Shown: piece after piece, positions 17,039-64,000 of the stretch
Numbering within the stretch: the stretch's first letter is position 1
Layout of the letters: each line of letters starts with the position of its first letter
Notes under the pieces: model-generated
Database searches by the model: none
The model's input: only the letters and a program-made list of their open reading frames with translations
Told to the model about the DNA's origin: nothing
Position numbers and translations under genes: made by a program
Assembly: GCF_006345805.1 (NCBI RefSeq)
Contig: NC_043021.1
Location: 25,854,001-25,918,000 of the forward strand
Direction of reading: 5' to 3'
Length of the DNA stretch: 64,000 nt
DNA from: Octopus sinensis
Taxonomy: Eukaryota

Positions 17039-17088
<50 letters not shown>

Positions 17089-17124
17089 CATATTTCTGCC
17101 TTCATTTTTTTTCCTCTCTCCATC

Positions 17125-17295: not shown

Positions 17296-17304
17296 ATATA
17301 GAGG

Positions 17305-23908: not shown

Positions 23909-24310
23909 CTCTTTTACTTGTTTCAGTCATTTGACTGTGGCCATACTGGAGCACTGCCTTTAGTCGAGAAATCGACCCCAGGACTTATTCTTTGTAAGCC
24001 TAGTACTTATTCTATCAGTGCCTTTTGCTGAACCACTAAGTTATGGGGACGTAAATACACCAACATCAGTTGTCAAGCGATGGAAGGGAAACAAACACAG
24101 ACACAAAGACACACACACATAAATATATGTATATATATATATATATATATATACACAACAGGTTTCTTTCAGTTTCCGTCTACCAAATCCACTTACAAGG
24201 CTTTGGTCAGCCCATGTCTATAGTAGAAGACACTTGCCTAAGGTACCACGCAGTGGGACTGAACCCAGAAACATTTGGTCGGGAAGCAAGCTTCTTACTA
24301 TACAGCCACT
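23909..24310 (-). mobile_element. SINE family A, full length
   Basis: Low divergence from 43618-43977. Confidence 0.85.
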
Positions 24311-24313
24311 TCG

Positions 24314-24354
<41 letters not shown>

Positions 24355-24357
<3 letters not shown>

Positions 24358-24683
24358 CAATAAGACAATGGAGGGGATCAAGAGGTGGTAGTCATCAACT
24401 TTTAGACATTATGTTATGTCTATTTATTTATTTTTTAAAAACCATTATAACAATATACATACATGTATAACATATTATGCTTTACATATATAATATATAA
24501 AAGTATAAAAATACCAGTAATTATTAAAATATATAACGTAAAGCATAGGAAGTAGAATACTACTTCCTATGTTTATACATATATGTATATTGTTATAATG
24601 GTTTTTAAAAATAAATAGACGTAACATAATGTCTAAAACCTGATGAATACCAGCTCTTGATCCCCTCCATTTTCTTATTGCTG
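24355..24683. mobile_element. Tc1/mariner-type MITE with ~120-bp TIRs
   Basis: TA|cagcaataag...cttattgctg|TA; internal 12-bp hairpin at 24544-24571. Confidence 0.8.
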
Positions 24684-39720: not shown

Positions 39721-40079
39721 TTATACAGTTGTTTCCATGCCATTGTTAGGCGAAGGGACTGCTTCATTGTCTGTGGACAGGGATGCCATGGTGCAGTGAT
39801 AACGCATTTGGTGAATGGATGGTGCTGGTGCCGGTGGAGGTGGTGGTAACAGTGCAGGATCAAGTCCTTGATCATAGATTATACTTTCATACGGAGGAGG
39901 AGGATCGTAGCCCGGATATGGAGGCAGTTCAACTGGTTTGGGGAAGTCCATGCTAGAGAATATTCCAAAGAAGCCTTCCCAGGTGAGAATATCATAGGGG
40001 TCTGCATAAAGTTCCCCTATAGTTCCAATAGGACCTCGCTGATGGCCTGACTGTTGGCTTCGCCCAATATCCTGGTGTG
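39721..40079 (-). CDS. Gene B last coding exon: proline-rich tail with LPPY and PPPY motifs (HQDIGRSQ...NNGMETTV*)
   Basis: Acceptor tatctctttcctatag (alternative in-frame AG 21 nt upstream, exon start 40100); non-repetitive 3' part of ORF 39721..40503; TAA at 39721-23. Confidence 0.85.
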
Positions 40080-40117
40080 CTATAGGAAAGAGATAAACAC
40101 CTGCATATTCATATAAA

Positions 40118-40425
40118 ATATATATAAATAACATATATAGATACATACACAAAAGATACACACATATACATGTATATATGCATACATATATAAATACATA
40201 TATATACATACATATACATATATATACACATATATATATATATATATACATATACACATATATACATATACACATATATATATATATATATATACATATA
40301 CACATATATACATATACACATATATACACACACATATATATATATATATATACACACATATATACATACATACATATATATATACACACATATATACATA
40401 TACACATATATACATATACACATAT

Positions 40426-40456
<31 letters not shown>

Positions 40457-40519
40457 CACACATATATACATATACACATATATACATATACACATATATA
40501 CATACATACATATATACAT

Positions 40520-40543
<24 letters not shown>
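40118..40543. repeat. Compound TA/CA microsatellite
   Basis: Direct inspection. Confidence 0.95.
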
Positions 40544-40552
<9 letters not shown>

Positions 40553-43500
40553 AATAAAGTTACACTTGTAAGCTTCAGTTTAGAATTTGATTTGGTGAGT
40601 GAAACAAAGGAATTTGTTAGAAAATGAAATCACTAGAATGATCCCCAAAGAAGAAAACTAAAGGTGTTAACTTTAAATATTCTTTTCTACTCTAGGCCTT
40701 AAGGACCGAATTTTTGGAACTAATTTGTATTAGAAAAGAATAATATAAATTAGTTCCAAAATTTGGGGCCCTGTGCTCGGAGTAGAAAACTAACTTTAGA
40801 TATTAAAACATTTAATTAATTTTTATCCATTGATGAGTTCCAAATGACTTAATGTAATAATGAGTATCAGCTTTGTTGAAATACATCTTCTTCAATTGCA
40901 TAACCGAAATATGGTCTTTTGAAAAAGAAAAAGCTGTCTGGTTAAATTAAATAAATACACCATTTGACCATTTAAAACCTGTTCCATTTATTGGATTCTG
41001 TCTAACAAATTGATTCTGACAATGATTTTTTATACATACATACATATCTGTATACATATACACATATCTATATACATACATACATACATATCTGTATACA
41101 TATACACATATCTATATACATACATACATATACATTCATACATACATATATACATAATATCTATATACATGTACACACACACACACACACAGATGGGTAC
41201 ACAACCAACATTCCAGCAACTGATTGTCCAGTACCTCTTTGAATCCAGGTGAGCAGACTTGAATTTGCCATGACTATTGTTAACCTATTTTCACTACTAA
41301 GCCTTCATTTGTCTATTCACTAGTTACACACAATGAAGGTGGAAACTCTCCCCACACCTTCGATAATATCAGTGACAGGGAGGGGAGAGGTTGGTGTGCA
41401 CGGGCAACATCTGGTCTTCCATAAACAACTTTGCCCAGACTTGTGTGCCTCTGCGGGAGGTGGGGTAACTTCCTAGGTGCAATCCCATGGTCATTCATGA
41501 CTGAAGCGGGTCTTTACCCTTTACTTCAACACAAACATACAAACACTCTCCTTACACTGACCCATAATATTATAAAGATGAAAATGTTTAAATTTCAATC
41601 AAACACCATGTGAAAACCCCTTAAAGACTGTCTCCCTGTGAAGCACAGGCTAGTTGATCTCCCTTCACAGCAGAATATACACAATGTCCCCAGCATGAAA
41701 AGGGTCAAGATAAATATATGCCCTTCGTTGTTATGTCTAGAGTGGCAAGTAGTCAGGAGGTTGGGGCATGACATTAGATTTTGTTTTGAATATTTACACT
41801 TTCACTTCATATTGCTCGGGTGCTGTGTGGGGACCAGCAATGTGAAAAGGGACAGAGCCAATGTTTCCTGTGTGTGTCGTAAAAGGCAACTAAAAGAGGT
41901 TGGTGGAAGGATTTGTACTCCGGCCTCACAAAACCCTCACCAGCAACAGCTACCCAAAACAGACCCATGGGTTGGAAGGTTGTCAACTGAATGGTCAAAA
42001 GGTGCCATCTGCTAGGAACAGTAGGGAGTTACCAACAAATAATGGATGCAGTGACTCCATGTTTCAGAGCATTCCCCCACCCCTCCCCTGCCATATTACC
42101 TACTAGTGAATACCAAAAAATGGATCATGAAAGTTTTATAGTGACAAAAAATTATTAACAACATGGCAATACAATAATTATTATATAATCTTTTCTAATC
42201 CAGCAAAAATGGATAACCCAAGGCTGCCAGAAAATTGGTAATATACCTGTATTTTATGTCAATTTATGTGAGATAAATGTTAATTTATATGAGGTTATGT
42301 TAACATTTTAAAAGGTTCAGTTATTCATTGAATAATCGGGTTTGCTGTAATTTTTAGCTCTGATCAATAAAACCCGTGAATAAATGCATTCTAGCCATGA
42401 CCATCCTGTCTTTGTTTTCTCAGATACAAAATAAATAGAACTACTTCAACCAAAGTGTCCCTCCTTCTTTGAAAAAGTAATTTCAAGTATGGAATTTGTT
42501 TCTAGTAATAAGCAAAGGTATGCCAAGAAGGTTTAATACAAAGAAAAGTTAATAACTTGACAGCATTTTTGTAGAATGTAATTTGAAGAATATTTGGCTG
42601 CTGTTTCTAGCATATTAGACTACCACATAGAAGCCCCTCCATTGAAGTTTAAATGGAATAAGGAAGGGATTAGCATAACATTATTATCATTGCCAGAGCT
42701 GAGCAAGAACCAAAGTCTGTCGCTGATGAACGATAACATGAAATTGTTGAGAGAGCCAGAGCAAAGTTAGTAGAGAAATGGTCCCAGGATGGCATGGTTC
42801 TTATCGGACTGACAGAGAAAATCTTTGATGAGAACTAATTATATTTCATGGCATGGAAAAATTTCCATGGATTCCTTCTGCATGAAAAACACATAATTAA
42901 GTGTGTGTGTGGGGGGGGGGGGTTAATATGAAACAAAAAATAATTCATCAATTAAAAATTCCCAATAACTGGATGGAAAGGTGATTATCATGAAGGAATA
43001 CATGGATCGTTATCACTAACGAACATTCTTGTCAAGAAAGACATGGGCCACAACTCTGTATGTCCTTTTGGTTGAAAACTTTTGGTTCGCTTAGAACACA
43101 ATGTCTGTTCTCAGCTCCACTCAGTCGTGTGTCCACAGAAATAGAAATATGAAATAGGTTCCATTTCAGAAGCAGGGGAGTGGCTATCTTAAGATCAGTC
43201 CCGAGATAACCTTTGTATGTGGCACAGTGTCTCTCAGACAAGAGTTGCTAGGCAGCGAAAGCAATAACAGACAGATTAAGCAAGAGAGAAGAATGGCATT
43301 TTGTGAGTGAGGCAGAGTGAGCTGCTGATGTTCTGTGGAGGAGGAGGAGGAGAGGAGGAAACACTGTGCATACCATTAAAAGGTTACACATGGGTCTGTT
43401 CCCTAGAAACTTGAGAATGGTACCAACGCAGACAAGAGCATACCACCTCTCTTCAACATGCGATTATTATGATTGCATCGCATCTTGAAAGTTATGCTTT

Positions 43501-43617
43501 TTTTCAGCCCAAGAGAGGCAGTTAGGGTTAGTTTGTTCGCTTGGACTGCAGGTTCAAGTCATGCCATACGAATATTTCTCTGACATGAAAACAAGGATGG
43601 AATACAACATACAAAGA

Positions 43618-43977
43618 TTTACTCTTCTACTAGTTTCAGTCATTTGACTGTGGCCATGCTGGAGCACCGCCTTTAGTCGAGCAAATCAACCCCAGGACTT
43701 ATTTTATCGGTCTCTTTTGCCGAACTGCTAAGTTACGGGGACATAGACACACCAGCATTGGTTGTAAAGCGATGTTGGTGGGGGGGAGACAAACACAGAC
43801 ACACATACATATATATATATATACAACGAGCTTCTTTCAGTTTCCGTCTACCAAATCCACTCACAAGGCTTTGGTCAGCCCAAGGCTATAGTAGAAGACA
43901 CTTGCCCAAGATGCCACGCAGTGGGACTGAACCCGGAACCATGTGGTTGGTAAGCAAGCTACTTACCACAGAGCCAA
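43618..43977 (-). mobile_element. SINE family A, full length
   Basis: Head, core, microsatellite, CR1/L2-type tail. Confidence 0.85.
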
Positions 43978-44110
43978 AGATTTACCAACAAAGTCACACA
44001 GTAGCAGAATAATATGAATAGATTTCATTCCATATTTAAGACTGTTTACTTGTTGTAAAGTGAAAAATAATCGATAACAACTCTCCAACCAGAAGTAGTG
44101 ATAAACGTAC

Positions 44111-44185
44111 AAGAAGGGACCCGGCTTTTGGAGATGCCTCTTTGCACAGCACATTCAATAGGACCCAGGTGGACTTTTACACTGT
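44111..44185 (-). CDS. Gene B candidate 75-nt symmetric cytoplasmic exon (SVKVHLGPIECAVQRGISKSRVPS)
   Basis: Acceptor attttccttgaaacctttgattctgtag, donor CTT|GTACGT; open; phase 1 to 1. Confidence 0.5.
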
Positions 44186-44819
44186 CTACAGAATCAAAGG
44201 TTTCAAGGAAAATACAATTTCAAAAGAAATTATAGATCTCATGGTTCTCTAGAAAGTGCCAACCATTTTACAGTTTTCAAAATAACTGAAATTTATTTAC
44301 AGATGCAGTTAATTAAATGTGATTGCAAATGTCAACGATGTCGTTAATCAGCGGAAGCTGTGTGTAACATAATCTGTCTTCTTCTGAGATGAAAGGTTTA
44401 TTTTCCCTTCTTGGGAATGGCAGACACTCTAATGTGTTTCCAAAAACCAAGATAGATTCCTGTGTGGAAAGAGAGAGAGTTTGTTGAGGGTAGGAGTTAG
44501 CTCTCCAATGATGTTGTGCTTAAAGCTAATGAGATGCTGTCAGAATTGTTGGTTTGAAATGACTGGAGGCTGTTTTGTATTTGGTGTGTGTGTGTGTGTG
44601 TGTGTATGGAGTGAGCTTGGTAGAATGCAGGGAAATAGCTTCTGAGGAGATTTATATAATTGTGTGTGTGTGCAAAATGGGTAAAGAATGTGGAGACAAT
44701 TTGACAAGAGGCAGAAAAGGGATCAGCTGCAACTTGAGGAGTCACAAAGCTTACAGGTTATGTGATCCTTGGCCATATTCTTCACCTATATTTCTGTTAC
44801 ACCAACATTACAAGGCCCA

Positions 44820-44952
44820 TCTCTCCCTCACTCACTCACTCCTCTTTCTCTCTCATTCTCTTTCCCTCCCTCCCTCCCTCACTCCTCTTTCTCTCTCATT
44901 CTCTTTCCCTTCCCCTTTCCCTCCCTCATTCCTCTTTCTCTCTCATTCTCTA
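44820..44952. repeat. Polypyrimidine tract with three copies of cactcctctttctctctcattctct
   Basis: Direct inspection. Confidence 0.85.
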
Positions 44953-45025
44953 CCTACGGCCATGTGGCCATGTACGTTCCTCAAACAAACAATTAAAACA
45001 GGAGACAAGATAACAAAATACAAAC

Positions 45026-45217
45026 CAGTTCTTCTGTGCCGCAGAATTCTAGTCAGTGTGAAGCTTGTGTTGGGAGTTTCGTTGATCCGCAGCTGGCTCC
45101 GGCGCCATACATGATAGGTGAAAGCACTGGCAATTAACAGGATAAGTGGAATGACGATTCCGATGGCAAGCAGAAGGGTGTGACTTGATGTATTTGGGGC
45201 TGTAGTTTGATGGTAGC
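45026..45217 (-). CDS. Gene B TM exon (YHQTTAPNTSSHT LLLAIGIVIPLILLIASAFTYHV WRRSQLR...RHRRT)
   Basis: Acceptor tctttcgtttcattttcag, donor CTG|GTTTGT; 23-aa hydrophobic helix followed by basic residues; phase 1 to 1. Confidence 0.88.
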
Positions 45218-45374
45218 CTGAAAATGAAACGAAAGATTTAGGGAGTTGGGAATTAAATAGAGAATAGAAAGGGACAGGATTAAAGACTAAACCACAATGT
45301 TTAATGATTTATTAAGTCTACTATCAACAATACAATACAAAATGATACACACACACACACACACATATAATATT

Positions 45375-45735
45375 ATCATCATCACCATTTAACATCCACT
45401 TTCCATGTTTGCGTAGACCAGACAGAATTTGTTGAGGCAGATCTTCCTGTTGCCAACCCTCACCTGTTTTCAAGAAAGGTAATATTTCCCCATGACATTA
45501 CATGTTTTTCATGGAAGATTGGAAACAACTGACCACCCGTGTGCTGATGACACTCACAGTCATCACATGATGTCAAAACGAGGATATATTACACACGCAG
45601 AAGGACACGCATCCACTCACAGAACTTTGATAAGCCTAAGGTCAGACTAGAAGACACTTGCCAAAGATGCTACACAGTGGGATTGAACTCCAGACCAAAT
45701 TGTTGGGAAGCAAGCTTCTTAACCACACAGCCAGT
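45375..45735 (-). mobile_element. SINE, family A head with RTE-type tail
   Basis: catttaacatccactttccatg tail; agaagacacttgcc core. Confidence 0.7.
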
Positions 45736-46237
45736 TTGCCAATGGTGGTTGGCAGTCGAGGCTTGACGGGTTGGAAATCTAAAGTAAAACCTATGAAAGT
45801 CTGGGCATTTCCAAGAATGAGCAGAAGAAGAATTATGAAGAACAATGGAGAAGCTGCTGAGCAGGAAAGCATCTAGATGGTCCTGGCTGGAAAGGGGTGA
45901 TTGGGGGGGGGGCAGACTTAGGTATTTGATCAGCATAGGAGTGGAGTTGTTTGGATGAGGGTGTCATGTTGTAAGATCCAGGGAAACACCCAGCAACACT
46001 GATGACGTGTTCCAGCATTACTTTGGACTGCGGTAGGTTACCGTCTTGTTCAAGAACAAACTTATTTCTCACTGGTTGAAGGCTACAAACAACTTGAGAT
46101 GATCCTTACAAGATTATTGTGATTGGGAGAAGAAGATTAGCTGAATCATCTCACCAAGAGGAAGCGTTAATACATAGAATGGTCGATGTGTCTAAAAGGT
46201 AAACAGGCCTGAAATGATGAATAAAGGGACCTGGAGA

Positions 46238-46268
<31 letters not shown>

Positions 46269-46869
46269 GAAGTAATTTATTAGAAAGGGGAAAAAGTTAT
46301 TACTTACCATTATCTCCATTAAAGAGGGTGGTGGGCCAGGGTAGAGAAGTCGTAGGATCTATAATAACAATAATAATAATACTTTCTTACATTTTCCACA
46401 AAGGCAATAGATGAGAAGGGCAATTATAAAGACAAAGTGGTGGTGGTCGTGGTGGGCCTTGCACAGATAACTGAATGATTAAAAAATGTGTGAAGGCATG
46501 AAATATAAGCATCCATGGTGTCCAAATAATAAATAATGATAATATAATCTTCCTGATACAGAGAGCCTCCATAATGTGCCAATCAAGGGGTCCCACAGAT
46601 AACCCTAAACACCAAGGGTAAAATATCCCAAGTTATTCTCCAGCCTACTGAGAGCAGTATATTTAGGGTGGTTCTGTCCAGTCTTGCCATTTTCACCATT
46701 TCCACTCATCTTTAGAAGCAGTAAAACCAACCCTCCACAATAAGAATGGGTAAATACATATAAAATGGTAAAACAGATATTTCATTTGACTTTATTTTAG
46801 TACAAATAATTTAATTAACTCTTTCACTCATTACTCAGCATTCATGACCACAAGTGAGGCACAAAAACT

Positions 46870-47195
46870 GAAGGATTTCTGGAGTAACATGACTGGACAG
46901 AGTGCATAGCATGGAGATCAGGAATTTTCTCTGGGTTGGGATGGAATGTCTCTACATTGAAAGATCACAGCTCTGGTGCTATGAGCATGTGATTAGAATG
47001 TTACAGGTAAGAATTGGGAGATGGATTCTTTAAGCCAAACCAACTGGCAGGAGACTGAGGGATAGATGAAGAACAAGACAGTATGATCATGTCCATAGCT
47101 TCAGCTGGCCATGTTTGAAAATCCAGTTGGAAAGTCTAGTGACAGTTGCTTCTGACTGGATTCTATGGAGGAGGTGCTTTCCAGGAATAGTGGGC
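46870..47195 (+). mobile_element. Decayed RTE-type ORF2 C-terminal fragment
   Basis: ERSQL.WC.EHV.RM...WIL.AKPTGRR...RTR pattern with stops. Confidence 0.6.
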
Positions 47196-47862
47196 AGAAA
47201 AAAGATGAATATATGGATAATTACCAGAGAACTGTAATGAATTTATCCTGATAAAATGATTGTATTTGTGGCATACTAGCAGTGTGAACTCGCAACCACA
47301 GATTAAATTTATTGCGTAATTTGATTGAATTCTTTGCACCTAATCAATAAACATGTCTATTCGGTGAGAGTCATGGTTGCTATTGCCCACAGCAACAGGA
47401 GAAGCAGCATTGGTGCAGCGGTGCTATCAGCAACAGTGACATCAGAAGTATTGTGCAGTAACAACAGCCAACAGATCTCTTAACAGCAAACCCAATCAGT
47501 CAGGTCCCAATATCAACAACAGATATGAATTAGACAAAAATCAAAAGAGAACCAAAGTCCTTTTACTGACAACGGCCGATAAAAGTTACGACATTGAACT
47601 CTATTACAGGACTTCCCAGCTGAGCTTTCATTGAAAGTAGATGGTAGCAAAAATGAAAAATATCTATGTTCATTTATATGCATACATCACTACAGACTCA
47701 CTTGCATTTCTTCATATCTATTGCATATTCATACATATACGTTCTTTTATGTACATTTTCAGACTCATTTGCATGTATATGCACACACACACACACACAC
47801 ACACACAACTGGTTGAGCACCAAACCATCCAATTAAGACACGAGGACTATTTTGTCGAATAC

Positions 47863-47997
47863 CTGAAGGTGAGGTGCGGGGGGTTAACATAGAAAACATC
47901 ATAGATTCAACTATTTGTGTCCTAATATCTCTTCCACGAAAAGAAAAAAAAATGAACAAATATTCAAAACATTGGAATTTATTGTAATTGAAAGCTG
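47863..47997 (-). CDS. Gene B candidate symmetric exon (AFNYNKFQC...TPRTSPS), acceptor position uncertain
   Basis: Open frame within ORF 47765..48052, donor CAG|GTATTC; several possible acceptors; phase 1 to 1. Confidence 0.4.
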
Positions 47998-48028
47998 CTG
48001 TGGATGTGTGAGCACACACACACACACA

Positions 48029-48059
<31 letters not shown>

Positions 48060-48385
48060 CATAATCCCCACAACCACCATCATATTATTACTGATGTAAT
48101 ACAATGAAATATCACTTAATATGAAACCCAGTTTATGGTTGATGACAACTCCACCCATCCATAAACCATTTACACACAAACAATGTCAGCAGACAACATT
48201 TTTTGTCAAAATATTTGTAAAATAATGTATTTTCTCTCCTACTTGACACAGATAATCAACTAAACAAACACACTGGTATTTGTACTACAGACAGTTATAT
48301 AATGTAGTCAGTCTCTAGATACAAATACTGTACACATTTATATACTGTAGCCATAATATATACAATAATCAATGTAGCCATTCTA

Positions 48386-48530
48386 TGAGGGGGTGGGGCT
48401 GAAAAGTTCCAGGCTTTTGGGTAAAAGAAAATATAGGAATATGAGTTAATTGTGATTTTACCAAACATATTCCCCTCTCAGACTCAGGCACTTATTGCAA
48501 TGGTCGTTCAGTTTTCTAAGCCCTGTTAGA
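48386..48530. mobile_element. Partial copy of the 30556 mariner-type MITE
   Basis: Aligns with the reverse complement of ~30640-30747. Confidence 0.65.
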
Positions 48531-48612
48531 GACAGTCATCAGTGTTGATGGCTGAACGGACAAAGACGGTCATACAAATAGAGAGAACAAGAGACAAGAG
48601 TTCAAAACTCAC

Positions 48613-48757
48613 CAGGTATTATAGTAACTTTTGCCTTACAGTAAAAATTGGTTTGGTTTTGGAACTGTTTATTGATTTCAAGAATGCCATAGTAATGCTG
48701 ACCACCACGCAGATAAACAGGCTCACGATAGGAAGTTGTGTTACAGGTGAACTCCTT
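48613..48757 (-). CDS. Gene B exon 3 (KEFTCNTTSYREPVYLRGGQHYYGILEINKQFQNQTNFYCKAKVTIIP)
   Basis: Acceptor tgcttttctctctttttcag, donor CTG|GTGAGT; phase 0 to 1; not in the ORF track (too short). Confidence 0.85.
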
Positions 48758-49059
48758 CTGAAAAAGAGAGAAAAGCAAGAGGTGGATATTCTTAGAGTGT
48801 GGTTAATAAGTGTGGAGGCATAAGGTCACGGTTTCAATTGCTGGATCAGGTAGTGTACTGTGTTCTTGAGCAAAACATTTTCATTTGACATTGCACCGTC
48901 CACTCAGCTGTAACCGAGTCACCCGGCAATGGACTGGCATCCTATCCAGGGGGAATGTTGTATTCTCACTTTTATTTCATAGAAGCTGGATAACTGGACC
49001 TTCGAGTCCCAGGACTTGAGATACAAATGTCCAGCATTGGGAGGATGTGTAATAAGGTG

Positions 49060-49398
49060 GGGTTGGCAACTGGCTTGGTAGACACCCACAAAATTATCCA
49101 CCATCTTTCCAACAACGACTTTGGGCACCTTTTTGAGTTCCATATGTCAAACATTCATGGAAATGCAAACACAACACAGCAGCCATGACTTTTGGAAACT
49201 CTTTCCATGCTCAGAATTGCTGAAACAGGCTAAATTCCCCACACCAGTCATTAGCTGTCGGGACAGGACGTCCTTTAAAGCTCGGCCCATTCACAATTCA
49301 TTTCCCCTGCATTATTCTATTTATTGGTCATGCATTCTTGGTCACTTTTCCTGACGAGTTGTGGTGCACCTGAGCACTGAGCACTGTATACAATAAGG
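49060..49398 (+). mobile_element. Second, more decayed 3' fragment of the same CR1-type family
   Basis: LVDTHKIIHHLSNN...HSSHDF matches ORF 812..1138; shares 3' end gttg(t/c)ggtgcacctg...actgtatacaataa. Confidence 0.75.
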
Positions 49399-49510
49399 TC
49401 CCCTCTCTCTCTCTTTTGGAGAGGCACTGAGCAGCTATACGCACACATACACACACGGCAGTAACTTCCACCTACCAAATTCAATCACAAAGCTCCGGTC
49501 GGCTCGGGGC

Positions 49511-49543
<33 letters not shown>

Positions 49544-49752
49544 ATGTGAAATAGAAAGATGAATAATCTTGTAGTAGATTAATCAAAAGTTTAACCGATA
49601 CCTTAGTAGCAAAAATCACAGCAGTAAACAGCACGGTTGGAGGTACAACCATCTGGCGTTGCAACCGTGCGTTGGTGCGGATAATTGAAATTAAAACATT
49701 ATTGGTGAATTGAAGAAATGGAGCTGAACGCAGATTGAACAGAAATCGTTTT

Positions 49753-49842
49753 ATTTCATTCTACACGTGTTTCGAAAGGCACAAATTACCAAAATCCGAT
49801 TGAATAATGGGACCATATTGTGTCTTTCTCTTCAGGAAGAAA
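49753..49842 (-). ncRNA. Identical hammerhead ribozyme in the left arm (sense to gene B pre-mRNA)
   Basis: Reverse complement of 51960-52048. Confidence 0.8.
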
Positions 49843-51959
49843 AAAAGGAAATCCGTTGGAAAAACAAAAACAGAACAGAGGCGGAGCAAAAACAAATCGA
49901 ACTATGCTCCTAAGAGCCCATGGCGAAACTGTTTATCAGTGTATGTTGAGAACGGTGGCTGAAGAATTCAACGGGTCAGGCATCGGTCAATCATGTGGGT
50001 GAGGGTGTATAGATGTTCTTTGTGACCGAGAATAAAGTTCTGACTATTTAAGGAATATTGGATGTTTTATAAGGGGCGAGAAAAAATCTACTTAGAGACG
50101 TGTGTGTGTGTATACTGCTCTATATATGTGTGTGTTGGCGTAGGGGTAGAAAACATTTTTTGTGTACGTGTGTGCGTTTGATCGTTCGGCTGTCAGTGGC
50201 TACTGCCGTGATAACCGTTGGGTGGCAGAAAGAAAAAAATATATATATATATTATGTTTTATGTGTGTGTGTGTTCATCTAAGCCTGCCTTGTCAAGGAA
50301 ACCCCCCGCTGTGAAAAAACCAAGCCCCGTTTGTCTTACAGGAGTAATTCCCCTTGCAGTGGTTAATCGTAGATATCTTAAAGGCTATTTCAGAATTGTT
50401 ACCAAGGGCTATGGGTGCCGGTATTATTTATAAACGCTATTTAAAAGCCAGATAGCTTAAGTTCGTATCCTTCAGTCGCCATATTAGCTTACTGAGTCCC
50501 GTGGTCTGGCGCTTGTTCACGTCCCGAAAAGTTGCGTAATGATTGGAGACACGCAAAGACAATCTTGAGGATGATGCCCCTACATAAGTGAAGACATCTG
50601 AGTCCGTGTAAACCTTGCATTGGTAGACGGCGTTTTTGATCTTGGAGTTCGCCGACGTGAATCTTAATCTGCTAGGATTAGTTTCTGAAATTAGAACTGC
50701 GTTCCTGTCACTATATTCGTTCCGAGACCTGCAGCCGCTTACTACTCTATTTTCCACTACGTCACTATTAACTATAGGAATAACCCCTGATTCTCCACTA
50801 TCTATCAGAGTGCTGTCATTGCTACTGCCCGTGGTGCTGCTATTGCGGGAAATGATGCTGGGGATGCTATTGGGGCTCTCTACCCTACTCCCATTGTTAC
50901 CGTCAACCACAACACCCCTATTTATAACTATACCCCTAGTGGGTACTCCTGGCTGGAGCTGAGATTATGTGTCACTGTACTGGCTCTCATATCATTATTA
51001 CTACTATAATTATTCCTACTGAGCATTAAACTGGGAGCGGAAGAGGCTGTGCCTCCGGAAAAAGGTGATAGGGTCTTAGTAAGTAGCCTATTATTATGGG
51101 AGGCGATTATCTGGGCGAGGTTTTTAGTGTTGGAGAAAGCTATCCTAACTTTACGAACTTAAGGATACGAACTTAAGCTATAGGCTGGAATGGTCAATTT
51201 TGTCGGTGGCCCTCCCATTTGATAGGAGCAGAAGACAGTGCAACCTTTGTGTCTCCGAACTCTTCCATATTTTGTTTGCCAGAGGCCGGATGGTAAACGG
51301 GCTCCTACAGTCGGCTTTTCGATGCCCCCATTGGCGGCGTTACACTTATCTGGCTTTTAAATAGCGTTTATAAATAATACCGGCACCCATAGCCCTTGGT
51401 AACAAATTCTGAAATAGCCTTTAAGATATCTACGATTAACCACTGCAAGGGGAATTACTCCTGTAAGACAAACGGGGCTTGGTTTTTTCACAGCGGGGGG
51501 TTTCCTTGACAAGGCAGGCTTAGATGAACACACACACACATAAAACATAATATATATATATATTTTTTTCTTTCTGCCACCCAACGGTTATCACGGCAGT
51601 AGCCACTGACAGCCGAACGATCAAACGCACACACGTACACAAAAAATGTTTTCTACCCCTACGCCAACACACACATATATAGAGCAGTATACACACACAC
51701 ACGTCTCTAAGTAGATTTTTTCTCGCCCCTTATAAAACATCCAATATTCCTTAAATAGTCAGAACTTTATTCTCGGTCACAAAGAACATCTATACACCCT
51801 CACCCACATGATTGACCGATGCCTGACCCGTTGAATTCTTCAGCCACCGGTTCTCAACATACACTGATAAACAGTTTCGCCATGGGCTCTTAGGAGCATA
51901 GTTCGATTTGTTTTTGCTCCGCCTCTGTTCTGTTTTTGTTTCTCTAACGGATTTCCTTT

Positions 51960-52048
51960 TTTCTTCCTGAAGAGAAAGACACAATATGGTCCCATTATTC
52001 AATCGGATTTTGGTAATTTGTGCCTTTCGAAACACGTGTAGAATGAAA
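51960..52048 (+). ncRNA. Minimal type I hammerhead ribozyme in the PLE pLTR (right arm)
   Basis: ttc-CTGAAGA-gaaag...ctttc-GAAA-c-acgt-g-TA-gaa: complete core, 5-bp stem II plus extension, stem III with palindromic ACGT loop, GUA site, short stem I. Confidence 0.8.
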
Positions 52049-52309
52049 TAAAACGATTTCTGTTCAATCTGCGTTCAGCTCCATTTCTTCAATTCACCAA
52101 TAATGTTATATATATATATATATATATATTAAACAGTGGTGCATCAACATGGCTGCAGCTATGAGATGAAACTACACCAAAATAAATATATATATAATCA
52201 TTTAAGATAATATAACATGAAATGAGGTAATGTCAGCTGAAAACTATTCGATTTACAGCTGGATGCCCTCGTAGTGTTAACCCTTCAGTCAGGCAAACCA
52301 AAGTCGTCA

Positions 52310-52840
52310 TCATTGGCGTCATCATCCACTTTTCTATTTTCATATGGGTTGGACAGAATTTGTTGAGACAGATTTTTCTACAACTGGGTGCTCTTCTTGT
52401 TGCCAACCCTCACTTGTTTCCAAGTAAAGTAACATCTCATGAACAGACATGCTTTCATGGAAGATTGGAAATGAAGGCCACTGCTTGGTTGATGGAAACA
52501 TCTATTGACAGCTATTACATAATGTCAAGACAAGGAGAAAGTCACACACACACATATACATACATGCATATACATATGTATAAACACAGACACACACACA
52601 TATATTTGTCCACACACACATATATACTCAACTCTGTGTCTATCAAGCTGTTTCCTCTCCCCCACATCACACACACACACAATGGACTTCTATAAGTTCC
52701 TGTCAACCACGTCCATTCACAAGGCTTTGGTTGGCCTGGGGTTATAGTAAAAGACACTTGCCCAAGGTGCCATGCAGTGGGACTGAACCTAGAACTATGC
52801 AGTTGAGAAGGAAACCTTTTACCATGCAGCCACATCTGCA
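52310..52840 (-). mobile_element. SINE, family A head with RTE-type tail
   Basis: Same modules as 45375-45735. Confidence 0.75.
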
Positions 52841-52912
52841 CTTCATGTGCATCAGAAAATGAAAATCTTCAAACAGAATATTCTAAATCGAGAAAAGAGA
52901 CGTTGGACGTAC

Positions 52913-53166
52913 CCGTAAATCCAGTTGGTTCATCTCTTGCAGCAAGTAAAGACGAGCAGTCACTTTGCACGTTCGGATCCTCAAAAAGTCCACAGTCAAC
53001 CGCAGCCGCTCATTGTGCCGGATTGCAAACGTCATTGTGCATATGCGCGCACGTTTCGATTTGTTGCCATTGGCTACGATGTCCTGCACATTATAAGGGT
53101 AGAGGTGTATGACTTTGGTAGGATTGTATTCAAGAAATGTGCACCTGTCCTTCTTGTACATATACA
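52913..53166 (-). CDS. Gene B exon 2: N-terminal part of CUB-like ectodomain (YMYKKDRC...ICTMTFAIRHNERLRLTVDFLRIRTCKV...DLR)
   Basis: Strong acceptor tttttcttttctctcgttcgttccag, donor CGG|GTACGT; phase 1 to 0; beta-strand/Cys pattern resembles CUB-like domains. Confidence 0.85.
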
Positions 53167-53418
53167 CTGGAACGAACGAGAGAAAAGAAAAATGAAAATA
53201 ACATGTGTGTGGGTGTGGTGGATGTCAACACCCACTAACCTTTGTCAGATTGTCTGATGAAGGCTTGCAGGTGAAAACTTTAAAGTGACTGTCACACCTC
53301 TTCTTAAAGAAGGTTAATTAACATCCACTCTACACAAAACAAAAAGGTATTGAGTGATTCTTCAGTTTAGACATAAATTGGTTTTATATATAACTTGACA
53401 TAAAAACAAACATCAATA

Positions 53419-53454
<36 letters not shown>

Positions 53455-54982
53455 AATATACAAATAATGAGCAAATTTATAATGCACTACGCAGGGTTTT
53501 GAGGTAGTTTTAAAATTAAAGGTTGAAACTGCACTGTTTCAATAAACATAGAATTTAACCTTGCTGTGAAAAGTAAGATGTACCATTTTACCATTTTAAC
53601 ATTTTAGTAGCCATAAAATTTAGCTCTGCTCTGAAAAATGTTTTATCTCCTAATGGGCAAAAAGTAGAATCAGTGTGACTGGTTTCTAGTCTTGTTAGGT
53701 CTTCATCAGAGAAAGATTCCCCACCTTCTTGCCCAGTGCAAGATCATTAGAGTGTAGCTATTTATAGAACATAAAAACTTCAGCAGAGCCAACCTCGTCT
53801 GTCTGATTTGTACAACAGAGCAGACAGTGACAACATGGATTAAGTAATAGTGCCCCAGCATGGCCACAGCCTCATGGCTGAAACATATAAAAGAGTATAC
53901 AGTGTTTCTGAATGATTTGAAATGCCAGATTTGCCTTTTTTAATAAACATATACAGGTGCAGGGGTGGCCACGAAACCACTGGTTTCAGGGTCAGTCTCA
54001 CTGCATTCCACCTTGGGCAAGTGCTTTCTACTATAACCCTAGGCCGACCAAGCACTCAAGACAAAAAAACACATGCAGAAATATTCATACACACACACAC
54101 ACTCACACACACACACATGGATATACACACATATATATAAATATTTATGTGTGCCTTTGTCTTGAGTGTCATTGTCACACAAGCAGTGTGATTTATTTTT
54201 AAAATTCTGTGAAAATTTGTCTGGCCATAGGGAATAATCACCTTGTTTGGAAACAGGTGAGGATTGGTGACTGGAAGGGGCTCTGGCCATAGAATATCTG
54301 CTTCAATAAACTCTGCCTGACCGATGGGAGCATGGAAAAATGGATGTTAAAGTGGTGGTGGTGGTGGTAGAGCCTCACTGTGATAAGTAAATAAAATGGA
54401 AGTGTCAGGAAATTCTTGTTCAGACATTCCACTACATGACCATTTGGTGCATGAATGACACTTGGCCTGCAAATCTCAACTGCTTTACCTTCAAACCCAA
54501 ATAAACACAAACCTCTCATCAGCTGTCAACCAAAAATCATCACAATTTCATATACACAAACCTATCTATAATAATATGAATAGACTGTAGTTTTTGTTCA
54601 AATTATGCTACATATGTTTCAACAGCATGGCTGTTTATTTGTTTACCATGTATTACTTAGTATGAGATTACCTTAGATGAATTATATAACCAAACCATCT
54701 CTTCAGGCATTTTGAACATTTAACAGTTTATGCCAGAGTGCTACTGAATTAATCACAATGATTATTGAGGTCCCCATTGATACATGAATATATTTATCTA
54801 TCATATCTTTGTGTGTGTGTGTGTGTGTGCACATGCACACAAGTTTACTTTATTTGTTATATGTTCTGTTGGAAAGTTTATTGAATTGAAAGCTGATCAA
54901 GTGGACAAAACAACAACAACAACAATATGAAGAACCGACTGATCAACAACAACAATATAACAATGAATTATGAAGAACTTAC

Positions 54983-55085
54983 TTGTGTTATTTGACATCG
55001 TCATTGCATGTAGACTGCACACTGTTATGAAGAAGAAGAAGAAGTAAGGAAACCACCAGGCACCTTGAACTGAGTTAGTTAACAT
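54983..55085 (-). CDS. Gene B exon 1: signal peptide MLTNSVQGAWWFPYFFFFFITVCSLHAMTMSNNT
   Basis: ATG at 55085, hydrophobic core, donor A|GTAAGT; phase 1 matches exon 2. Confidence 0.75.
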
Positions 55086-56971: not shown

Positions 56972-56998
56972 AATATATATACATATATATATACACAC

Positions 56999-57031
<33 letters not shown>

Positions 57032-57299
57032 CACATATATATATACACATACATATATACACATATATATATATACAACACATACATATATATACACATA
57101 TATATATACACATATATATATATATATACACATACATATATACATATATATACACATATATATATACACATACATATATATACACATATATATATACACA
57201 TACATATATACATATATATACACATATATATATATACATACATATATATATACATACATATATATATACATATATATATACATACATATATATATATAC

Positions 57300-57330
<31 letters not shown>

Positions 57331-57499
57331 CATATATATATACACATATATATACACATACATATATACACATATATATACACATACATATATATACACA
57401 TATATATACACATACATATATATACACATATATATACACATACATATATATACACATATATATATACACATATACATATATATATACACATATATATAT

Positions 57500-57538
<39 letters not shown>

Positions 57539-59825
57539 TATACATATATATATATATACACATACATATATACATATACACATATATACACATACATATA
57601 TACATATACACATATATACACATACATATATACATATACACATATATATATATATATACACATATATAAATATATATACACATACATATATATATACACA
57701 TACATATATATATATATACACATACATATATATATACACATACATATATATATACACACATATATATACACATACGTATATACATATATATATATATACA
57801 CATACATATATATATATACACACACATATATATACACATACATATATATATATACACACATATATATATACACACATATATATACACATACGTATATACA
57901 TATATATATATACACATACGTATATACATATATATATATACACATACATATATATACATATATATACACATACATATATACACATATATATACACATACA
58001 TATATACACATACATATATACACATACATATATATATATACATATATATATACATATATATATACATACACATATATATATATACATACACATATATACA
58101 CATACATATATACATATACACATATATATACACACATATATATACACATATATATACACACATACATATATATATACATATATACACATACATATATATA
58201 TACATATATACATATATATATATACATATACATATATATATACACATATATACACATATACACATATATACACATATATATATACATATACATATATATA
58301 TATATACACATACATATATATATATACACATACATATATATATATACATATATATATATACACATACATATATATACATATATACACATATATATATACA
58401 CATATATACACATACATATATATACATATATACACATACATATATATACATATATACACATACATACATATATACACATACATACATATATATATACACA
58501 CATACATACATATATATATACACACACATACATACATATATATATACACACATACATACATACATATATATATACACACATACATACATACATATATATA
58601 TACACACATACATACATACATATATATATACACACATACATACATACATATATATATACACACATACATACATACATATATATATACACACACATACATA
58701 CACACATATATATATACACACACATACATACATACATATATATATACACACACATACATACATACATATATATATACACACACATACATACATACATATA
58801 TATATACACACACATACATACATATATATATACACACACATACATACATACATATATATATACACACAATACATACATACATATATATATATACACACAC
58901 ATACATACATACATAATATATACACACACACATATATATAATATCACACCACAATATATATATATACACACACACACATATATATATTACACACACACAT
59001 ATATATATATATACACACCACACATATATAATATAACACACACAACATATATATATATTACACACACACATATATATATATATACACACACACAATATAT
59101 ATATTATACACACCACACACATATATATATATACACACACACACATATATATATATACACACCACACATAATATATATACACACACACACACATATATAT
59201 ATATACACACACACATATATATATATACACACACACACATATATATATATACACACACACACACATATATATACACACACCAACATATATATATATAATA
59301 TATACACATACATACTATATATTACACATACATATATATATATACATATATATATACACATACATATATATACATTATATACACCTATATATATACACAT
59401 ATATACACATATATATAAACATATACACATACATATATACATATATACACATACATATATATACATATAACACATAATATATCTACCATATATACACATA
59501 CATAATATATTACACATACCATACATATATATATATACACACAACATACATATATATACACACACATACATACATATATATATACACACATACATACATA
59601 CATATATAATACAACATACATACATACATATATATTACCACACATACATACATACATATATATATACACACTACATACATACATATATATATACACAACA
59701 ACATACACAACATATATATATACACACACATACATACATACATATATATATACAACACATAATACTACATATATATATACACACACATACATACATACAT
59801 ATATATACACACCCACATACATACA

Positions 59826-59861
<36 letters not shown>

Positions 59862-60265
59862 CACACACATACATACATACATATATATATACACACACAT
59901 ACATACATACATATATATAATACCACACACATATATATATATATACACACACACACATATATATATACACACACACATATATATATATATACACACACAC
60001 ATATATATATTATACACACCACAATATATATATATACCACAACACAATATATATATACACACACACACACAATATATATATACACACACACACTATATAT
60101 ATATACACACACACCACATATATATATATACACACCACACATATATATATACACACCACAACCTATATATATATACACACACACACATATATATATATAC
60201 ACACACACACATATTATATATACAACACACAATAATAATATATATATATTATATTATATATATTA
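56972..60265. repeat. ~3.3-kb compound TA/CA/TACA microsatellite
   Basis: Source of the long Y/I/H/T and C/V/Y/M pseudo-ORFs. Confidence 0.97.
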
Positions 60266-63200: not shown

Positions 63201-63395
63201 CGCTGCCAGCCTCCCCTGGCACATAAAGAGCACCCACTACACTCATGGAGTGGTTGGCGTTAGGAAGGGCATCCAGCTGTAGAAACACTGCCAGATCAGA
63301 CTGGAGCCTGGTGCAGCCATCTGGTTCACCAGCCCTCAGTTCAAGTTGTCCAACCCATGCTAGCATGGAAAGCGGACATTAAATGATGATGATGA
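60266..63395 (+). mobile_element. RTE-clade LINE, near full length but inactivated and internally deleted; 3' UTR with repeated gccggtggcacgtaaaaagcacc units and (TGA)n tail
   Basis: GTVNVG, GIQEVRW, VGDFNGHVG, SQIDFIL, GVHRGSALSPLLF, YLGD, KGRLYDACVR, RGRPRKTWDEV motifs over several frames. Confidence 0.93.
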
Positions 63396-63584
63396 TATAC
63401 ATATATATACACACATACATATATACATATATATATATATACACACATATATATATACATATACATATATACACATATATATATAATATATATATACACA
63501 TATATATATAATATATATATACACATATATATATAATATATATATACACATATATATATAATATATATATACACATATATATAT

Positions 63585-63618
<34 letters not shown>

Positions 63619-64000
63619 CATACATATATATACACACACATATATATATATATACATATATATACATATACACACATATATATACACATATATATATACA
63701 CATATATATACACATCAACATACACACATATATATACACACACATACACACATATATATATACACACATATATATACACACATACATATATATATACACA
63801 CATATATATATATACACACATATATATATACACACATATATATATACACACATACATATATATATATATATATACACACACATACATATATATATGTATA
63901 TATATATGTATATATATATATGTGTATATATATGTGTATATATATATGTATGTATATATATGCATGTATATATATGTGTATATATATATGTATGTATATA
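63396..64000. repeat. Compound TA/CA/TG microsatellite
   Basis: Direct inspection. Confidence 0.95.

What the first reader, a model, noticed from the sequence alone, without database searches (positions are those of the whole stretch)
49753..52048. Intact hammerhead in gene B pre-mRNA, preceded by its own antisense copy
Seen: the left-arm hammerhead is sense to gene B and has a complete core, a GUA site and a palindromic ACGT loop III. The perfectly complementary right arm is transcribed ~2.2 kb earlier in the same intron. Known: PLE minimal hammerheads cleave mainly as dimers through palindromic loop III, and coleoid ADARs edit long duplexes heavily. Inference: the inverted arm may silence the ribozyme in cis by duplex formation, with editing or unwinding able to modulate it, giving a TE-derived switch on pre-mRNA integrity.
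Basis: partly seen in the sequence, partly recalled or inferred. Interest (0 to 1): 0.75.

Follow-up and report, generated by a model that had tools for sequence, protein, structure and literature searches.

The report
Penelope retrotransposon pair in octopus intron
The hammerhead ribozyme motif and its upstream antisense copy are real. They are the two outer ends of an ordinary, recent head-to-head insertion of two truncated copies of a Penelope-like retrotransposon in an octopus gene intron, and nothing suggests the host uses them as a switch.

Summary
A type-I hammerhead motif lies at 49754-49842 (- strand) and again at 51960-52048 (+ strand). It has a complete core, a GUA site and a short helix III with an ACGU loop. 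The two motifs sit at the outer ends of ~760-nt inverted arms that are 99.3% alike.

Gene B runs on the - strand. It is an uncharacterised Octopus membrane protein (LOC115224201 in O. sinensis). The feature lies in its intron 2 (52912-48758), so the antisense copy is transcribed about 2.2 kb before the sense motif.

The structure is not special to this gene. It is a 2,564-bp insertion of two 5'-truncated, head-to-head copies of a Penelope-like element (PLE) into a (TA)n microsatellite.
- The element has an RT plus a GIY-YIG-like ORF and resembles the Hydra clade.
- The site is empty in O. vulgaris, and the element is absent from the same intron in O. bimaculoides.
- The genome holds ~2,540 near-identical copies of the motif. 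About half of the sampled loci show the same (-,+) pairing.

Predicted folding pairs all 88 hammerhead nucleotides with the antisense arm. Published PLE hammerheads of this kind are essentially inactive as monomers.

Verdict: this is a known kind of element with a known insertion signature. The "switch on pre-mRNA integrity" is unsupported. Interest is low.

The parts
49516..49543 (.). Left (TA)n flank of the target microsatellite
   Evidence: The O. vulgaris alignment resumes at 49542.
49544..51153 (-). Left PLE copy. It is 5'-truncated, sense to gene B, and has the long 3' end ('tail' form ending ...TTTCACAT). It corresponds to positions 6032-7652 of the reference copy L052 (reverse complement) plus the tail.
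   Evidence: blastn against L052rc. Comparison of 3' ends.
49754..49842 (-). Hammerhead motif, sense to gene B. Core CUGAAGA is at 49835-49829, GAAA at 49773-49770, GUA at 49764-49762, and the predicted scissile bond is 49762|49761.
50454..50455 (-). Junction of a 166-nt internal deletion in the left copy. It removes reference positions 6734-6899, the end of the GIY-YIG-like region.
   Evidence: ORF comparison.
51154..51156 (.). Head-to-head junction between the two 5'-truncated copies. The boundary is uncertain by a few bases.
51157..52110 (+). Right PLE copy. It is 5'-truncated, antisense to gene B, and has the short 3' end (...AATAATGTT). It corresponds to reference positions 6710-7681.
51960..52048 (+). 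Hammerhead motif of the right copy. Its complement is the 'antisense copy' in gene B pre-mRNA.
49697..50454 (.). Left arm of the inverted repeat
   Evidence: 755 matches, 2 mismatches and 3 gap columns against the right arm.
51347..52110 (.). Right arm of the inverted repeat
52111..52130 (.). Right (TA)n flank of the target microsatellite
48758..52912 (-). Intron 2 of gene B (GT...AG, 4,155 nt). The insertion fills 2,564 nt of it.
52913..53167 (-). Gene B coding exon 2 (about aa 35-119)
   Evidence: tblastn of P0001/P0004.
48614..48757 (-). Gene B coding exon 3 (aa 120-167)
39724..55085 (-). Gene B coding span. Coding exons 1 and 4-6 lie at 55085-54984, 46359-46306, ~45215-45027 and 40083-39724; exons 2 and 3 are listed separately. 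The product is an uncharacterised single-pass membrane protein with PPxY motifs and a C-terminal ETTV.

Best explanation
The feature is one retrotransposition product. It consists of two 5'-truncated copies of a recently active Penelope-like element, joined head to head with their 3' ends pointing outward, and inserted into a (TA)n microsatellite in intron 2 of an Octopus gene.

Each copy ends with the element's 3'/pseudo-LTR region. That region carries the element's own type-I hammerhead, which has a two-base-pair helix III and a self-complementary ACACGUGU stretch. In the element's life cycle this motif is thought to act, as a dimer, on transcripts that carry two same-sense copies (tandem or pLTR-ORF-pLTR units).

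The inverted arrangement most likely arises because the PLE protein cuts and extends both target strands. Each DNA end then primes reverse transcription from the 3' part of the RNA. This step is my inference from published in-vitro work.

In gene B pre-mRNA the two arms are predicted to form a ~757-bp hairpin that buries the single sense hammerhead. That hammerhead is expected to be near-inactive as a monomer anyway. The expected consequences for the host are the generic ones of a long intronic dsRNA: a substrate for ADAR hyper-editing and possibly for small-RNA pathways. A ribozyme switch is not among them.

Shown here: the identity, anatomy, copy number, empty sites and predicted folding. 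Inferred: the both-strand priming origin and the lack of cleavage in vivo.
For: PLE identity:
- A near-full copy (L052) has a 923-codon open frame. It carries RT motifs (FDIASFYPSI, YRDDCLF) and a DKT motif. Its C-terminus is GIY-YIG-like, with CxxC and CxH around the conserved E and N.
- There are 322 homologues of ~700 aa. The best is from the cephalopod Argonauta hians. Precomputed annotations on homologous loci include HTH_animal and one neighbouring GIY-YIG hit.
- L065 shows the pLTR-ORF-pLTR unit: direct repeats of at least 812 nt and two same-sense hammerheads 3,649 nt apart.
- All copies examined abut (TA)n.

Head-to-head pairing is generic:
- Searches show pairs with arm-to-arm spacing from 0.2 to 4.3 kb.
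- Of the first 100 genomic places, there are 33 (-,+) pairs, 1 (+,+) pair, 32 singles and no (+,-) pair.
- The total is 1,276 + 1,265 copies, with a control count of 0.

One event: the two arms are closer to each other (2 mismatches) than to any of 10 other copies (8-16 mismatches).

Young insertion: O. vulgaris has the intact (TA)13 site with exactly the 2,564 bp missing. O. bimaculoides has no PLE in the intron.

The hammerhead is genuine:
- The core and all three helices are present.
- Four related PLE families (L059, L060, L061, L064) carry hammerheads 108-226 nt downstream of the ORF, or upstream of it in L061. Helices I and II show compensatory changes, and helix III is self-complementary in all five.

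Sequestration: the MFE of the 2,661-nt gene-B-sense RNA is -1730 kcal/mol, with 757 arm-arm pairs and 88/88 hammerhead nucleotides paired to the antisense copy. The dimer is favoured over two monomers, -45.3 against -35.2 kcal/mol.

Literature:
- Inverted 5'-truncated copies, tails and (TA)n bias: PMC8557442.
- HHRs in pLTRs, monomers uncleaved, opposite-strand pairs seen: PMC4209133, PMC6765202.
- Cleavage and extension of both strands, and two internal RT start sites: PMC11167929.
Against: - Local Pfam scans give no RT or GIY-YIG hit for the octopus ORF, and PDB sequence search gives none. The protein assignment rests on motifs, homologues and architecture.
- Rfam reports no hammerhead.
- The MFE of the isolated motif is no better than shuffles (z = -0.16).
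- No RNA data: transcription through the intron, hairpin formation, editing and absence of cleavage are all untested.
- A preprint reports that vertebrate HHR-bearing retrozymes are depleted from introns (10.64898/2026.07.22.740005). This hints that such elements can be harmful inside genes.
Confidence: 0.85

Rival explanations
1. The sense hammerhead can cut gene B pre-mRNA. The upstream antisense arm masks it. ADAR editing or helicases tune the masking, giving a TE-derived switch on transcript integrity.
For: - The geometry is as described.
- Predicted masking is complete.
- Octopus shows very strong hyper-editing of long dsRNA (PMC5625713).
- HHR-bearing retrozymes are reported to be depleted from vertebrate introns (10.64898/2026.07.22.740005).
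Against: - The arrangement is a by-product of insertion and is shared by about half of the sampled loci.
- The insertion is absent from O. vulgaris and O. bimaculoides, so there is no conservation.
- There is no second sense copy in the transcript for dimerisation.
- Monomeric PLE min-HHRs are uncleaved in vitro, and dimers are slow (PMC4209133, PMC6765202).
- No HHR-site RNA ends were found for an active PLE (PMC11167929).
- Editing would also destroy essential core adenosines (inference).
Confidence: 0.04
2. It is a DNA transposon or foldback element with long terminal inverted repeats, and the hammerhead-like words occur by chance.
For: Long near-perfect inverted arms with a unique centre.
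Against: - Arm length varies from locus to locus, from about 0.1 to 2.25 kb, while the outer ends stay constant. That is the pattern of 5' truncation.
- The arms are the 3' part of an RT-encoding unit.
- The centre consists of coding remnants of the same unit in opposite orientations.
- The motif occurs 0.025 times per shuffled window and covaries across related families.
Confidence: 0.02
3. The palindrome is an assembly artefact, such as a chimeric long read.
For: Near-identity of the arms. PLE tandem/inverted structures are known to trouble assemblies (PMC8557442).
Against: - The structure is asymmetric. The two 3' ends differ, a 166-nt deletion is present in one copy only, and the centre is unique.
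- Hundreds of independent loci have the same orientation rule.
- The same architecture is seen in an unrelated assembly (L060).
Confidence: 0.03
4. The hairpin matters to the host through dsRNA rather than the ribozyme. It would act as an ADAR sponge or hyper-editing site, an endo-siRNA/piRNA source, or a modifier of intron 2 splicing.
For: 757 predicted arm-arm base pairs within one intron. Hyper-editing in octopus concentrates on long near-perfect dsRNA formed by inverted repeats (PMC5625713).
Against: These are generic consequences. No expression, editing or small-RNA data were available. The young age argues against an adapted role.
Confidence: 0.3

Closest known systems
Penelope-like elements, Hydra clade (Craig, Yushenova, Rodriguez, Arkhipova 2021, PMC8557442)
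   Same: [quoted passage not shown]
- DKT in place of DKG
- CxxC and CxH around the conserved E and N, and no CCHH
- Insertion into (TA)n
- A hammerhead present
- pLTRs, inverted 5'-truncated partner copies and a 3' tail
- Reported from molluscs
   Different: - The unit is 3.65 kb rather than under 3 kb.
- I did not find the CxCX5C linker motif.
- The optional tail is ~150 nt rather than 30-40 bp.
- Clade placement was not tested by phylogeny.
Minimal/dimeric hammerheads of PLE pLTRs (Cervera & de la Pena 2014, PMC4209133; Lunse, Weinberg & Breaker 2017, cited in PMC6765202)
   Same: - Type I topology
- Full catalytic core and a G10.1-C11.1 pair
- A long helix II
- Helix III reduced to a short palindromic stretch, which implies action as a dimer
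- Location in the terminal repeat
- Pairs on opposite strands a few hundred bp apart have been seen before
   Different: - Helix II is unusually long: 10 bp closing a 35-nt insert.
- There is no unpaired nucleotide between A9 and G10.1.
- Copies are nearly invariant, as in D. virilis, which fits very recent amplification.
Conserved intronic self-cleaving ribozymes (amniote HH9/HH10 hammerheads; CPEB3 HDV-like ribozyme, PMC10274809)
   Same: A self-cleaving motif that is sense to a host pre-mRNA and sits inside an intron.
   Different: Those ribozymes are conserved at orthologous positions and fold as active monomers. This one is lineage-specific, is a dimer-type minimal motif, and is masked by its own inverted copy.
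Inverted-repeat dsRNA substrates of ADAR (inverted Alu pairs; palindromic Harbinger of Xenopus; PMC5625713)
   Same: Two inverted copies of a repeat in one pre-mRNA are predicted to form a long, near-perfect duplex.
   Different: Here a single insertion event creates both arms at once. No second, independent insertion is needed.
Animal non-LTR retrozymes (PMC7229834; 10.64898/2026.07.22.740005)
   Same: Hammerhead-bearing, PLE-related repeats.
   Different: Retrozymes are short, non-coding, head-to-tail tandems that give circular RNAs. This feature is an inverted pair with coding remnants.

Membership tests
Hammerhead ribozyme (type I) | Conserved core: C3 U4 G5 A6 N7 G8 A9 and G12 A13 A14 | tested here: met
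   CUGAAGA at 51967-51973 and GAA at 52029-52031, mirrored in the left arm.
Hammerhead ribozyme (type I) | A15.1-U16.1 pair and a cleavable NUH site (H17 not G) | tested here: met
   A 52032, U 52039 and A17 52040, giving the site GUA.
Hammerhead ribozyme (type I) | Three helices around the core, with helix I open | tested here: met
   Helix I has 7 pairs with one defect. Helix II has 10 bp plus an A.C mismatch. Helix III has 2 bp plus an ACGU loop, or 8 bp in a dimer.
Hammerhead ribozyme (type I) | Helices supported by covariation in relatives | tested here: met
   Across five PLE families, helix I positions 1, 2, 3 and 5 and helix II positions 1-5 show 2-4 standard pair types each. Helix III is self-complementary in all five. 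The sample is small and was aligned by hand.
Hammerhead ribozyme (type I) | Match to curated covariance models (Rfam RF00163, RF00008, RF02275-7) | tested here: inconclusive
   No hit at the gathering threshold or at E<=10. The same models miss the clear hammerheads in L059-L064.
Hammerhead ribozyme (type I) | Self-cleavage | not testable with these tools
   Needs in-vitro transcription or RNA end mapping.
Penelope-like element | A single ORF with an RT followed by a GIY-YIG endonuclease | tested here: inconclusive
   RT and GIY-YIG-like motifs were read by eye in P0005. There are 322 homologues, and GIY-YIG PF01541 is recorded on a neighbouring fragment in L061. Local Pfam and PDB searches are negative.
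Penelope-like element | Pseudo-LTRs from partial tandem copies | tested here: met
   L065 has direct repeats of at least 812 nt at 98.3% identity, with a unit length of 3,649 nt. In L048 and L054 the tail continues into the 5' UTR and the ATG.
Penelope-like element | Adjacent inverted 5'-truncated copy | tested here: met
   Seen in the window, in L031, and in 33 of 66 sampled loci.
Penelope-like element | Optional 3' tail (two alternative ends) | tested here: met
   Two discrete ends about 150 nt apart across copies. The window has one of each.
Penelope-like element | Hammerhead in the terminal repeat, sense to the ORF | tested here: met
   The hammerhead lies ~600 nt downstream of the ORF stop on the same strand.
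PLE, Hydra clade | (TA)n target; DKT motif; endonuclease without CCHH but with CxxC/CxH | tested here: met
   compared with the description in PMC8557442, section 11.
PLE, Hydra clade | CxCX5C linker motif and phylogenetic placement of the RT | tested here: not met
   No CxCX5C motif in P0005. No phylogeny was run, because reference sequences were not at hand. I therefore say 'Hydra-like', not 'member'.
Conserved intronic regulatory ribozyme | Presence at the orthologous position in related species | tested here: not met
   The site is empty in O. vulgaris, and the element is absent in O. bimaculoides.
Terminal-inverted-repeat DNA transposon | Fixed TIRs and a transposase; constant element length | tested here: not met
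   Arm length is variable and the content is RT-derived.
Animal retrozyme | Short non-coding head-to-tail tandem repeats, each with a hammerhead | tested here: not met
   The pair is inverted and carries ORF remnants. Direct short tandems of this family do exist elsewhere (L036).

The most novel reading that the evidence does not exclude
In O. sinensis, the sense hammerhead may occasionally escape the hairpin. This could happen co-transcriptionally, after ADAR hyper-editing of the antisense arm, or by pairing in trans with abundant PLE transcripts through the ACACGUGU stretch. It would then cut gene B pre-mRNA. The insertion would be a lineage-specific, editing-sensitive reducer of gene B output relative to O. 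vulgaris.

A milder version is more likely (about 0.3). In that version, self-made head-to-head PLE pairs, perhaps about 800 loci for this family alone, are a notable source of the unusually abundant long dsRNA and hyper-editing reported for octopus.
Probability: 0.04. Interest if true: 0.7.

Novelty: new member of a known kind. Interest (0 to 1): 0.2.

Why it matters
For annotation, this record stops a tempting over-reading. A hammerhead preceded by its own antisense copy inside an intron is what a Penelope-like element leaves behind when it inserts. It should be masked as a repeat rather than annotated as a regulatory ribozyme.

The modest positives are these:
- A very recently active, (TA)n-targeting, Hydra-like PLE family in O. 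sinensis, with ~2,540 near-identical hammerhead copies.
- A dated presence/absence difference from O. vulgaris inside a gene.
- A hammerhead with an unusually long helix II.
- A much longer "tail" than described for other PLEs.
- A ready natural set of long, perfect intronic hairpins in an animal known for heavy ADAR activity.

Tried and rejected
- Rfam found no hammerhead at the gathering threshold over the whole window or at E<=10 over the region. I do not take this as evidence against the motif, because the same search misses clear PLE hammerheads in L059-L064.
- The weak Rfam matches are chance: U6atac at E=0.77 inside both arms, plus nos_TCE, sR5 and RAGATH-22.
- The MFE z-score of the isolated motif is uninformative.
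- Pfam on the PLE ORFs and on the gene B exons gave nothing useful. PDB sequence search gave only a chance hit.
- My first strict descriptor, which allowed no defect in helix I, missed the motif. I relaxed it to allow one defect.
- The MAFFT alignment of the five hammerheads (A1) misplaces helix III by two columns for the octopus sequence. I therefore did not use the count of structure pairs and tabulated the pairs by script instead.
- The Argonauta locus L058 and loci L062 and L063 gave no convincing hammerhead with my descriptors.
- I rejected the TIR-transposon, chance-motif and assembly-artefact readings, for the reasons given under rival explanations.
Full report
**What is in the sequence.**
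Window 49.5-52.1 kb holds a long inverted repeat. The arms run 49697-50454 and 51347-52110 and flank ~890 nt of unique sequence. A gapped comparison of the arms gives 755 matches, 2 mismatches and 3 one-base indels. The 93% figure for the outer 178 nt comes from gapless extension across an indel.

A type-I hammerhead motif lies near each outer end. On the + strand of the right arm it reads as follows:
- helix I: 51960-51966
- CUGAAGA: 51967-51973
- helix II: 51974-52028
- GAAA: 52029-52032
- C, the ACGU loop and G: 52033-52038
- U and A17: 52039-52040
- helix I return strand: 52041-52048

The left arm carries the mirror image on the - strand, with A17 at 49762. A descriptor search found exactly these two sites in 64 kb. 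It required the core, a helix II of at least 5 bp, a palindromic helix III and a helix I of at least 5 bp with one defect allowed. It found 0.025 sites per shuffled window.

Rfam reports nothing. It also reports nothing for obvious hammerheads in related elements, so this negative carries no weight.

**Gene B.**
An open frame at 39724-40122 (- strand) matched one protein at 99% identity. That protein is a 367-aa hypothetical protein of Octopus vulgaris. Its cluster mates are LOC115224201 of O. sinensis and a fragment from O. bimaculoides.

tblastn maps six coding exons on the - strand between 55085 and 39724. Exon 1 is identical to the O. sinensis protein. The genome size of 2.72 Gb fits an octopus.

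Intron 2 runs from 52912 (GT) to 48758 (AG) and contains the whole feature. The left hammerhead is sense to gene B, and its complement is transcribed about 2.2 kb earlier. Transcription itself is inferred from gene models and from exon conservation in three species. I had no RNA data.

**What the repeat is.**
The 146 nt around the motif occur at 99-100% identity in at least 43 places in the genome. A 47-nt word from the motif occurs 1,276 + 1,265 times with up to 2 mismatches, against 0 for the reversed control.

A near-full copy (L052) has a 923-codon open frame. [quoted passage not shown]

It has 322 homologues of ~700 aa at 30-43% identity. The best is from the cephalopod Argonauta hians. 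Precomputed annotations on homologous loci include HTH_animal and, on a neighbouring fragment, GIY-YIG.

L065 shows the complete unit: direct repeats of at least 812 nt flanking the ORF, with two same-sense hammerheads 3,649 nt apart.

Every copy examined abuts (TA)n. The family has two discrete 3' ends about 150 nt apart. The extra 150 nt are the start of the unit's 5' UTR.

These are the published hallmarks of Penelope-like elements: pseudo-LTRs, adjacent inverted 5'-truncated copies, an optional tail, and hammerheads in the repeats. The DKT motif, the CxxC/CxH motifs and the (TA)n target are the traits listed for the Hydra clade (PMC8557442).

I call the family Hydra-like rather than a member of the clade. 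I did not find the CxCX5C linker motif and ran no phylogeny. Local Pfam scans were negative.

**Anatomy of this insertion.**
The comparison is with L052.
- The left copy (- strand, 49544-51153) covers reference positions 6032-7652 plus the long tail. It has a 166-nt internal deletion at 50454/50455.
- The right copy (+ strand, 51157-52110) covers reference positions 6710-7681 and has the short end.

The "spacer" is therefore the extra upstream part of the longer copy, plus the stretch that the other copy has lost by deletion.

The two arms are closer to each other (2 mismatches) than to any of ten other copies (8-16 mismatches). That fits one event from one template.

**The arrangement is generic.**
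Pairs are always (-,+), so the 3' ends point outward. Arm-to-arm spacings run from 0.2 to 6.6 kb. I counted the first 100 places listed by hand: 33 such pairs, one direct pair, 32 singles and no (+,-) pair. About half of the loci therefore look like the one in the finding.

An unrelated assembly shows the same thing (L060). Opposite-strand hammerhead pairs 100-700 bp apart were already noted in Schistosoma (PMC4209133). A purified PLE protein cleaves and extends both target strands and starts reverse transcription at two internal sites (PMC11167929). This offers a mechanism for both the inverted pair and the two kinds of end. Applying that mechanism to this locus is my inference.

**Age.**
The O. 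vulgaris orthologue (L037) aligns at 96-97% on both sides. It lacks exactly window 49543-52106 (2,564 bp). In its place it has an intact (TA)13 microsatellite. O. bimaculoides (L066) has 685 nt between the nearest alignable blocks, against 3.5 kb in the window, and has no PLE there. The insertion is specific to the lineage of the window's genome.

**Is the hammerhead real?**
The core, the G10.1-C11.1 pair, the A15.1-U16.1 pair and the GUA site are all present.

Four related PLE families carry hammerheads in their inter-ORF repeats. In L059, L060 and L064 they lie 108-226 nt downstream of the ORF; in L061 the motif lies upstream of it. Their helix I and II sequences are entirely different but still complementary. 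Helix I position 2 is U-A, G-C, C-G or A-U. Helix II position 4 is A-U, U-A, G-C or C-G. Helix III is self-complementary in all five. I take the octopus motif to be a genuine PLE hammerhead.

It stands out for its helix II, which has 10 bp closing a 35-nt insert. Its helix III has only two base pairs. A dimer through ACACGUGU is predicted to be about 10 kcal/mol more stable than two monomers.

**What it does in gene B pre-mRNA.**
The 2,661-nt gene-B-sense RNA folds into a hairpin with 757 arm-arm pairs at -1730 kcal/mol. All 88 hammerhead nucleotides pair with the antisense copy. The competing energies are -182 kcal/mol for the HHR:antisense duplex and -17.6 kcal/mol for the hammerhead fold.

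The sense motif is the last part of the hairpin to be transcribed, so its partner is already waiting. No second sense copy exists in the window for dimerisation.

Monomeric PLE minimal hammerheads showed no detectable cleavage in vitro, and dimers were slow (PMC4209133, PMC6765202). For an active PLE, no RNA-seq ends were found at the hammerhead site, and the ribozyme was dispensable for insertion in vitro (PMC11167929).

The editing idea cuts the wrong way, because ADAR would also deaminate the essential core adenosines (inference).

The realistic host-level consequence is a long intronic dsRNA. That is the preferred substrate for hyper-editing, which is exceptionally strong in octopus (PMC5625713).

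**Verdict.**
The "switch" interpretation is not supported. The feature is a young, ordinary head-to-head PLE insertion, a new member of a known kind. Interest is low. Side observations on the family and a possible link to octopus dsRNA load are listed separately.

Noticed in passing
G000 genome-wide; first 100 places on contig C1: The PLE family is very young and abundant. A 47-nt hammerhead word occurs 2,541 times with up to 2 mismatches. About half of the sampled loci are head-to-head pairs. By extrapolation that gives roughly 800 self-made long inverted repeats from this one family.
   Followed up: partly
window 49544-49696; L005, L010, L011, L013, L016, L048, L054, L065: The family has two discrete 3' ends about 150 nt apart, both followed by (TA)n. 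The extra 150 nt is the start of the unit's 5' UTR. This is far longer than the 30-40 bp tail described for other PLEs. It contains an 8-bp inverted repeat (CACGGTTG...CAACCGTG).
   Followed up: partly
window 51974-52028 and 49774-49828: Helix II of the octopus hammerhead has 10 bp (with one A.C) closing a 35-nt insert that has its own small hairpin. Related PLE hammerheads have 4-9 bp and loops of 3-7 nt.
   Followed up: partly
L059-L064 and the window: The Rfam 15 hammerhead models detect none of these PLE hammerheads, even at permissive E-values. Routine Rfam annotation will miss this class.
   Followed up: yes
window 52043-52048 (+) and 49754-49759 (-): An AAUAAA word sits within the first eight bases after the predicted cleavage site. 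It could be the element's polyadenylation signal, and in the left copy it is sense to gene B.
   Followed up: no
window 56973-60134 and 63395-64000: A 3.2-kb compound TA/CA microsatellite (GC about 0.2) lies about 1.9 kb upstream of gene B exon 1. Another (AT)n run reaches the window end. Such (TA)n tracts are the PLE family's targets.
   Followed up: partly
window 39724-40083 (-): The last exon of gene B encodes PPxY-type motifs (PPYPGY, PPPPY) and ends in ETTV, which looks like a PDZ-binding C-terminus. Exon 5 encodes a transmembrane segment. Pfam finds no family for the protein.
   Followed up: partly
window 26992-29004 (+); 60300-61800 (+); 812-1156 (-): Degenerate non-LTR retrotransposon remnants. 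There is an RVT_1 hit at 27608-28030 (E 3.7e-13). The others were recognised only by eye from their translations.
   Followed up: partly
window 13904-14248 (-), 16973-17399, 24123-24470 (+), 43677-44012 (+): A short repeat recurs whose translation contains LPNPLTRLWSAQGYSRRHLPK. It is probably a SINE-like element. Each copy lies next to a microsatellite.
   Followed up: no
Pfam gives no match.
   Followed up: no
L036 (G000:C2:185647500-185650500): Two direct, ~460-nt 5'-truncated copies of the same PLE lie 559 nt apart, start to start. A transcript through them would carry two same-sense hammerheads.
   Followed up: partly
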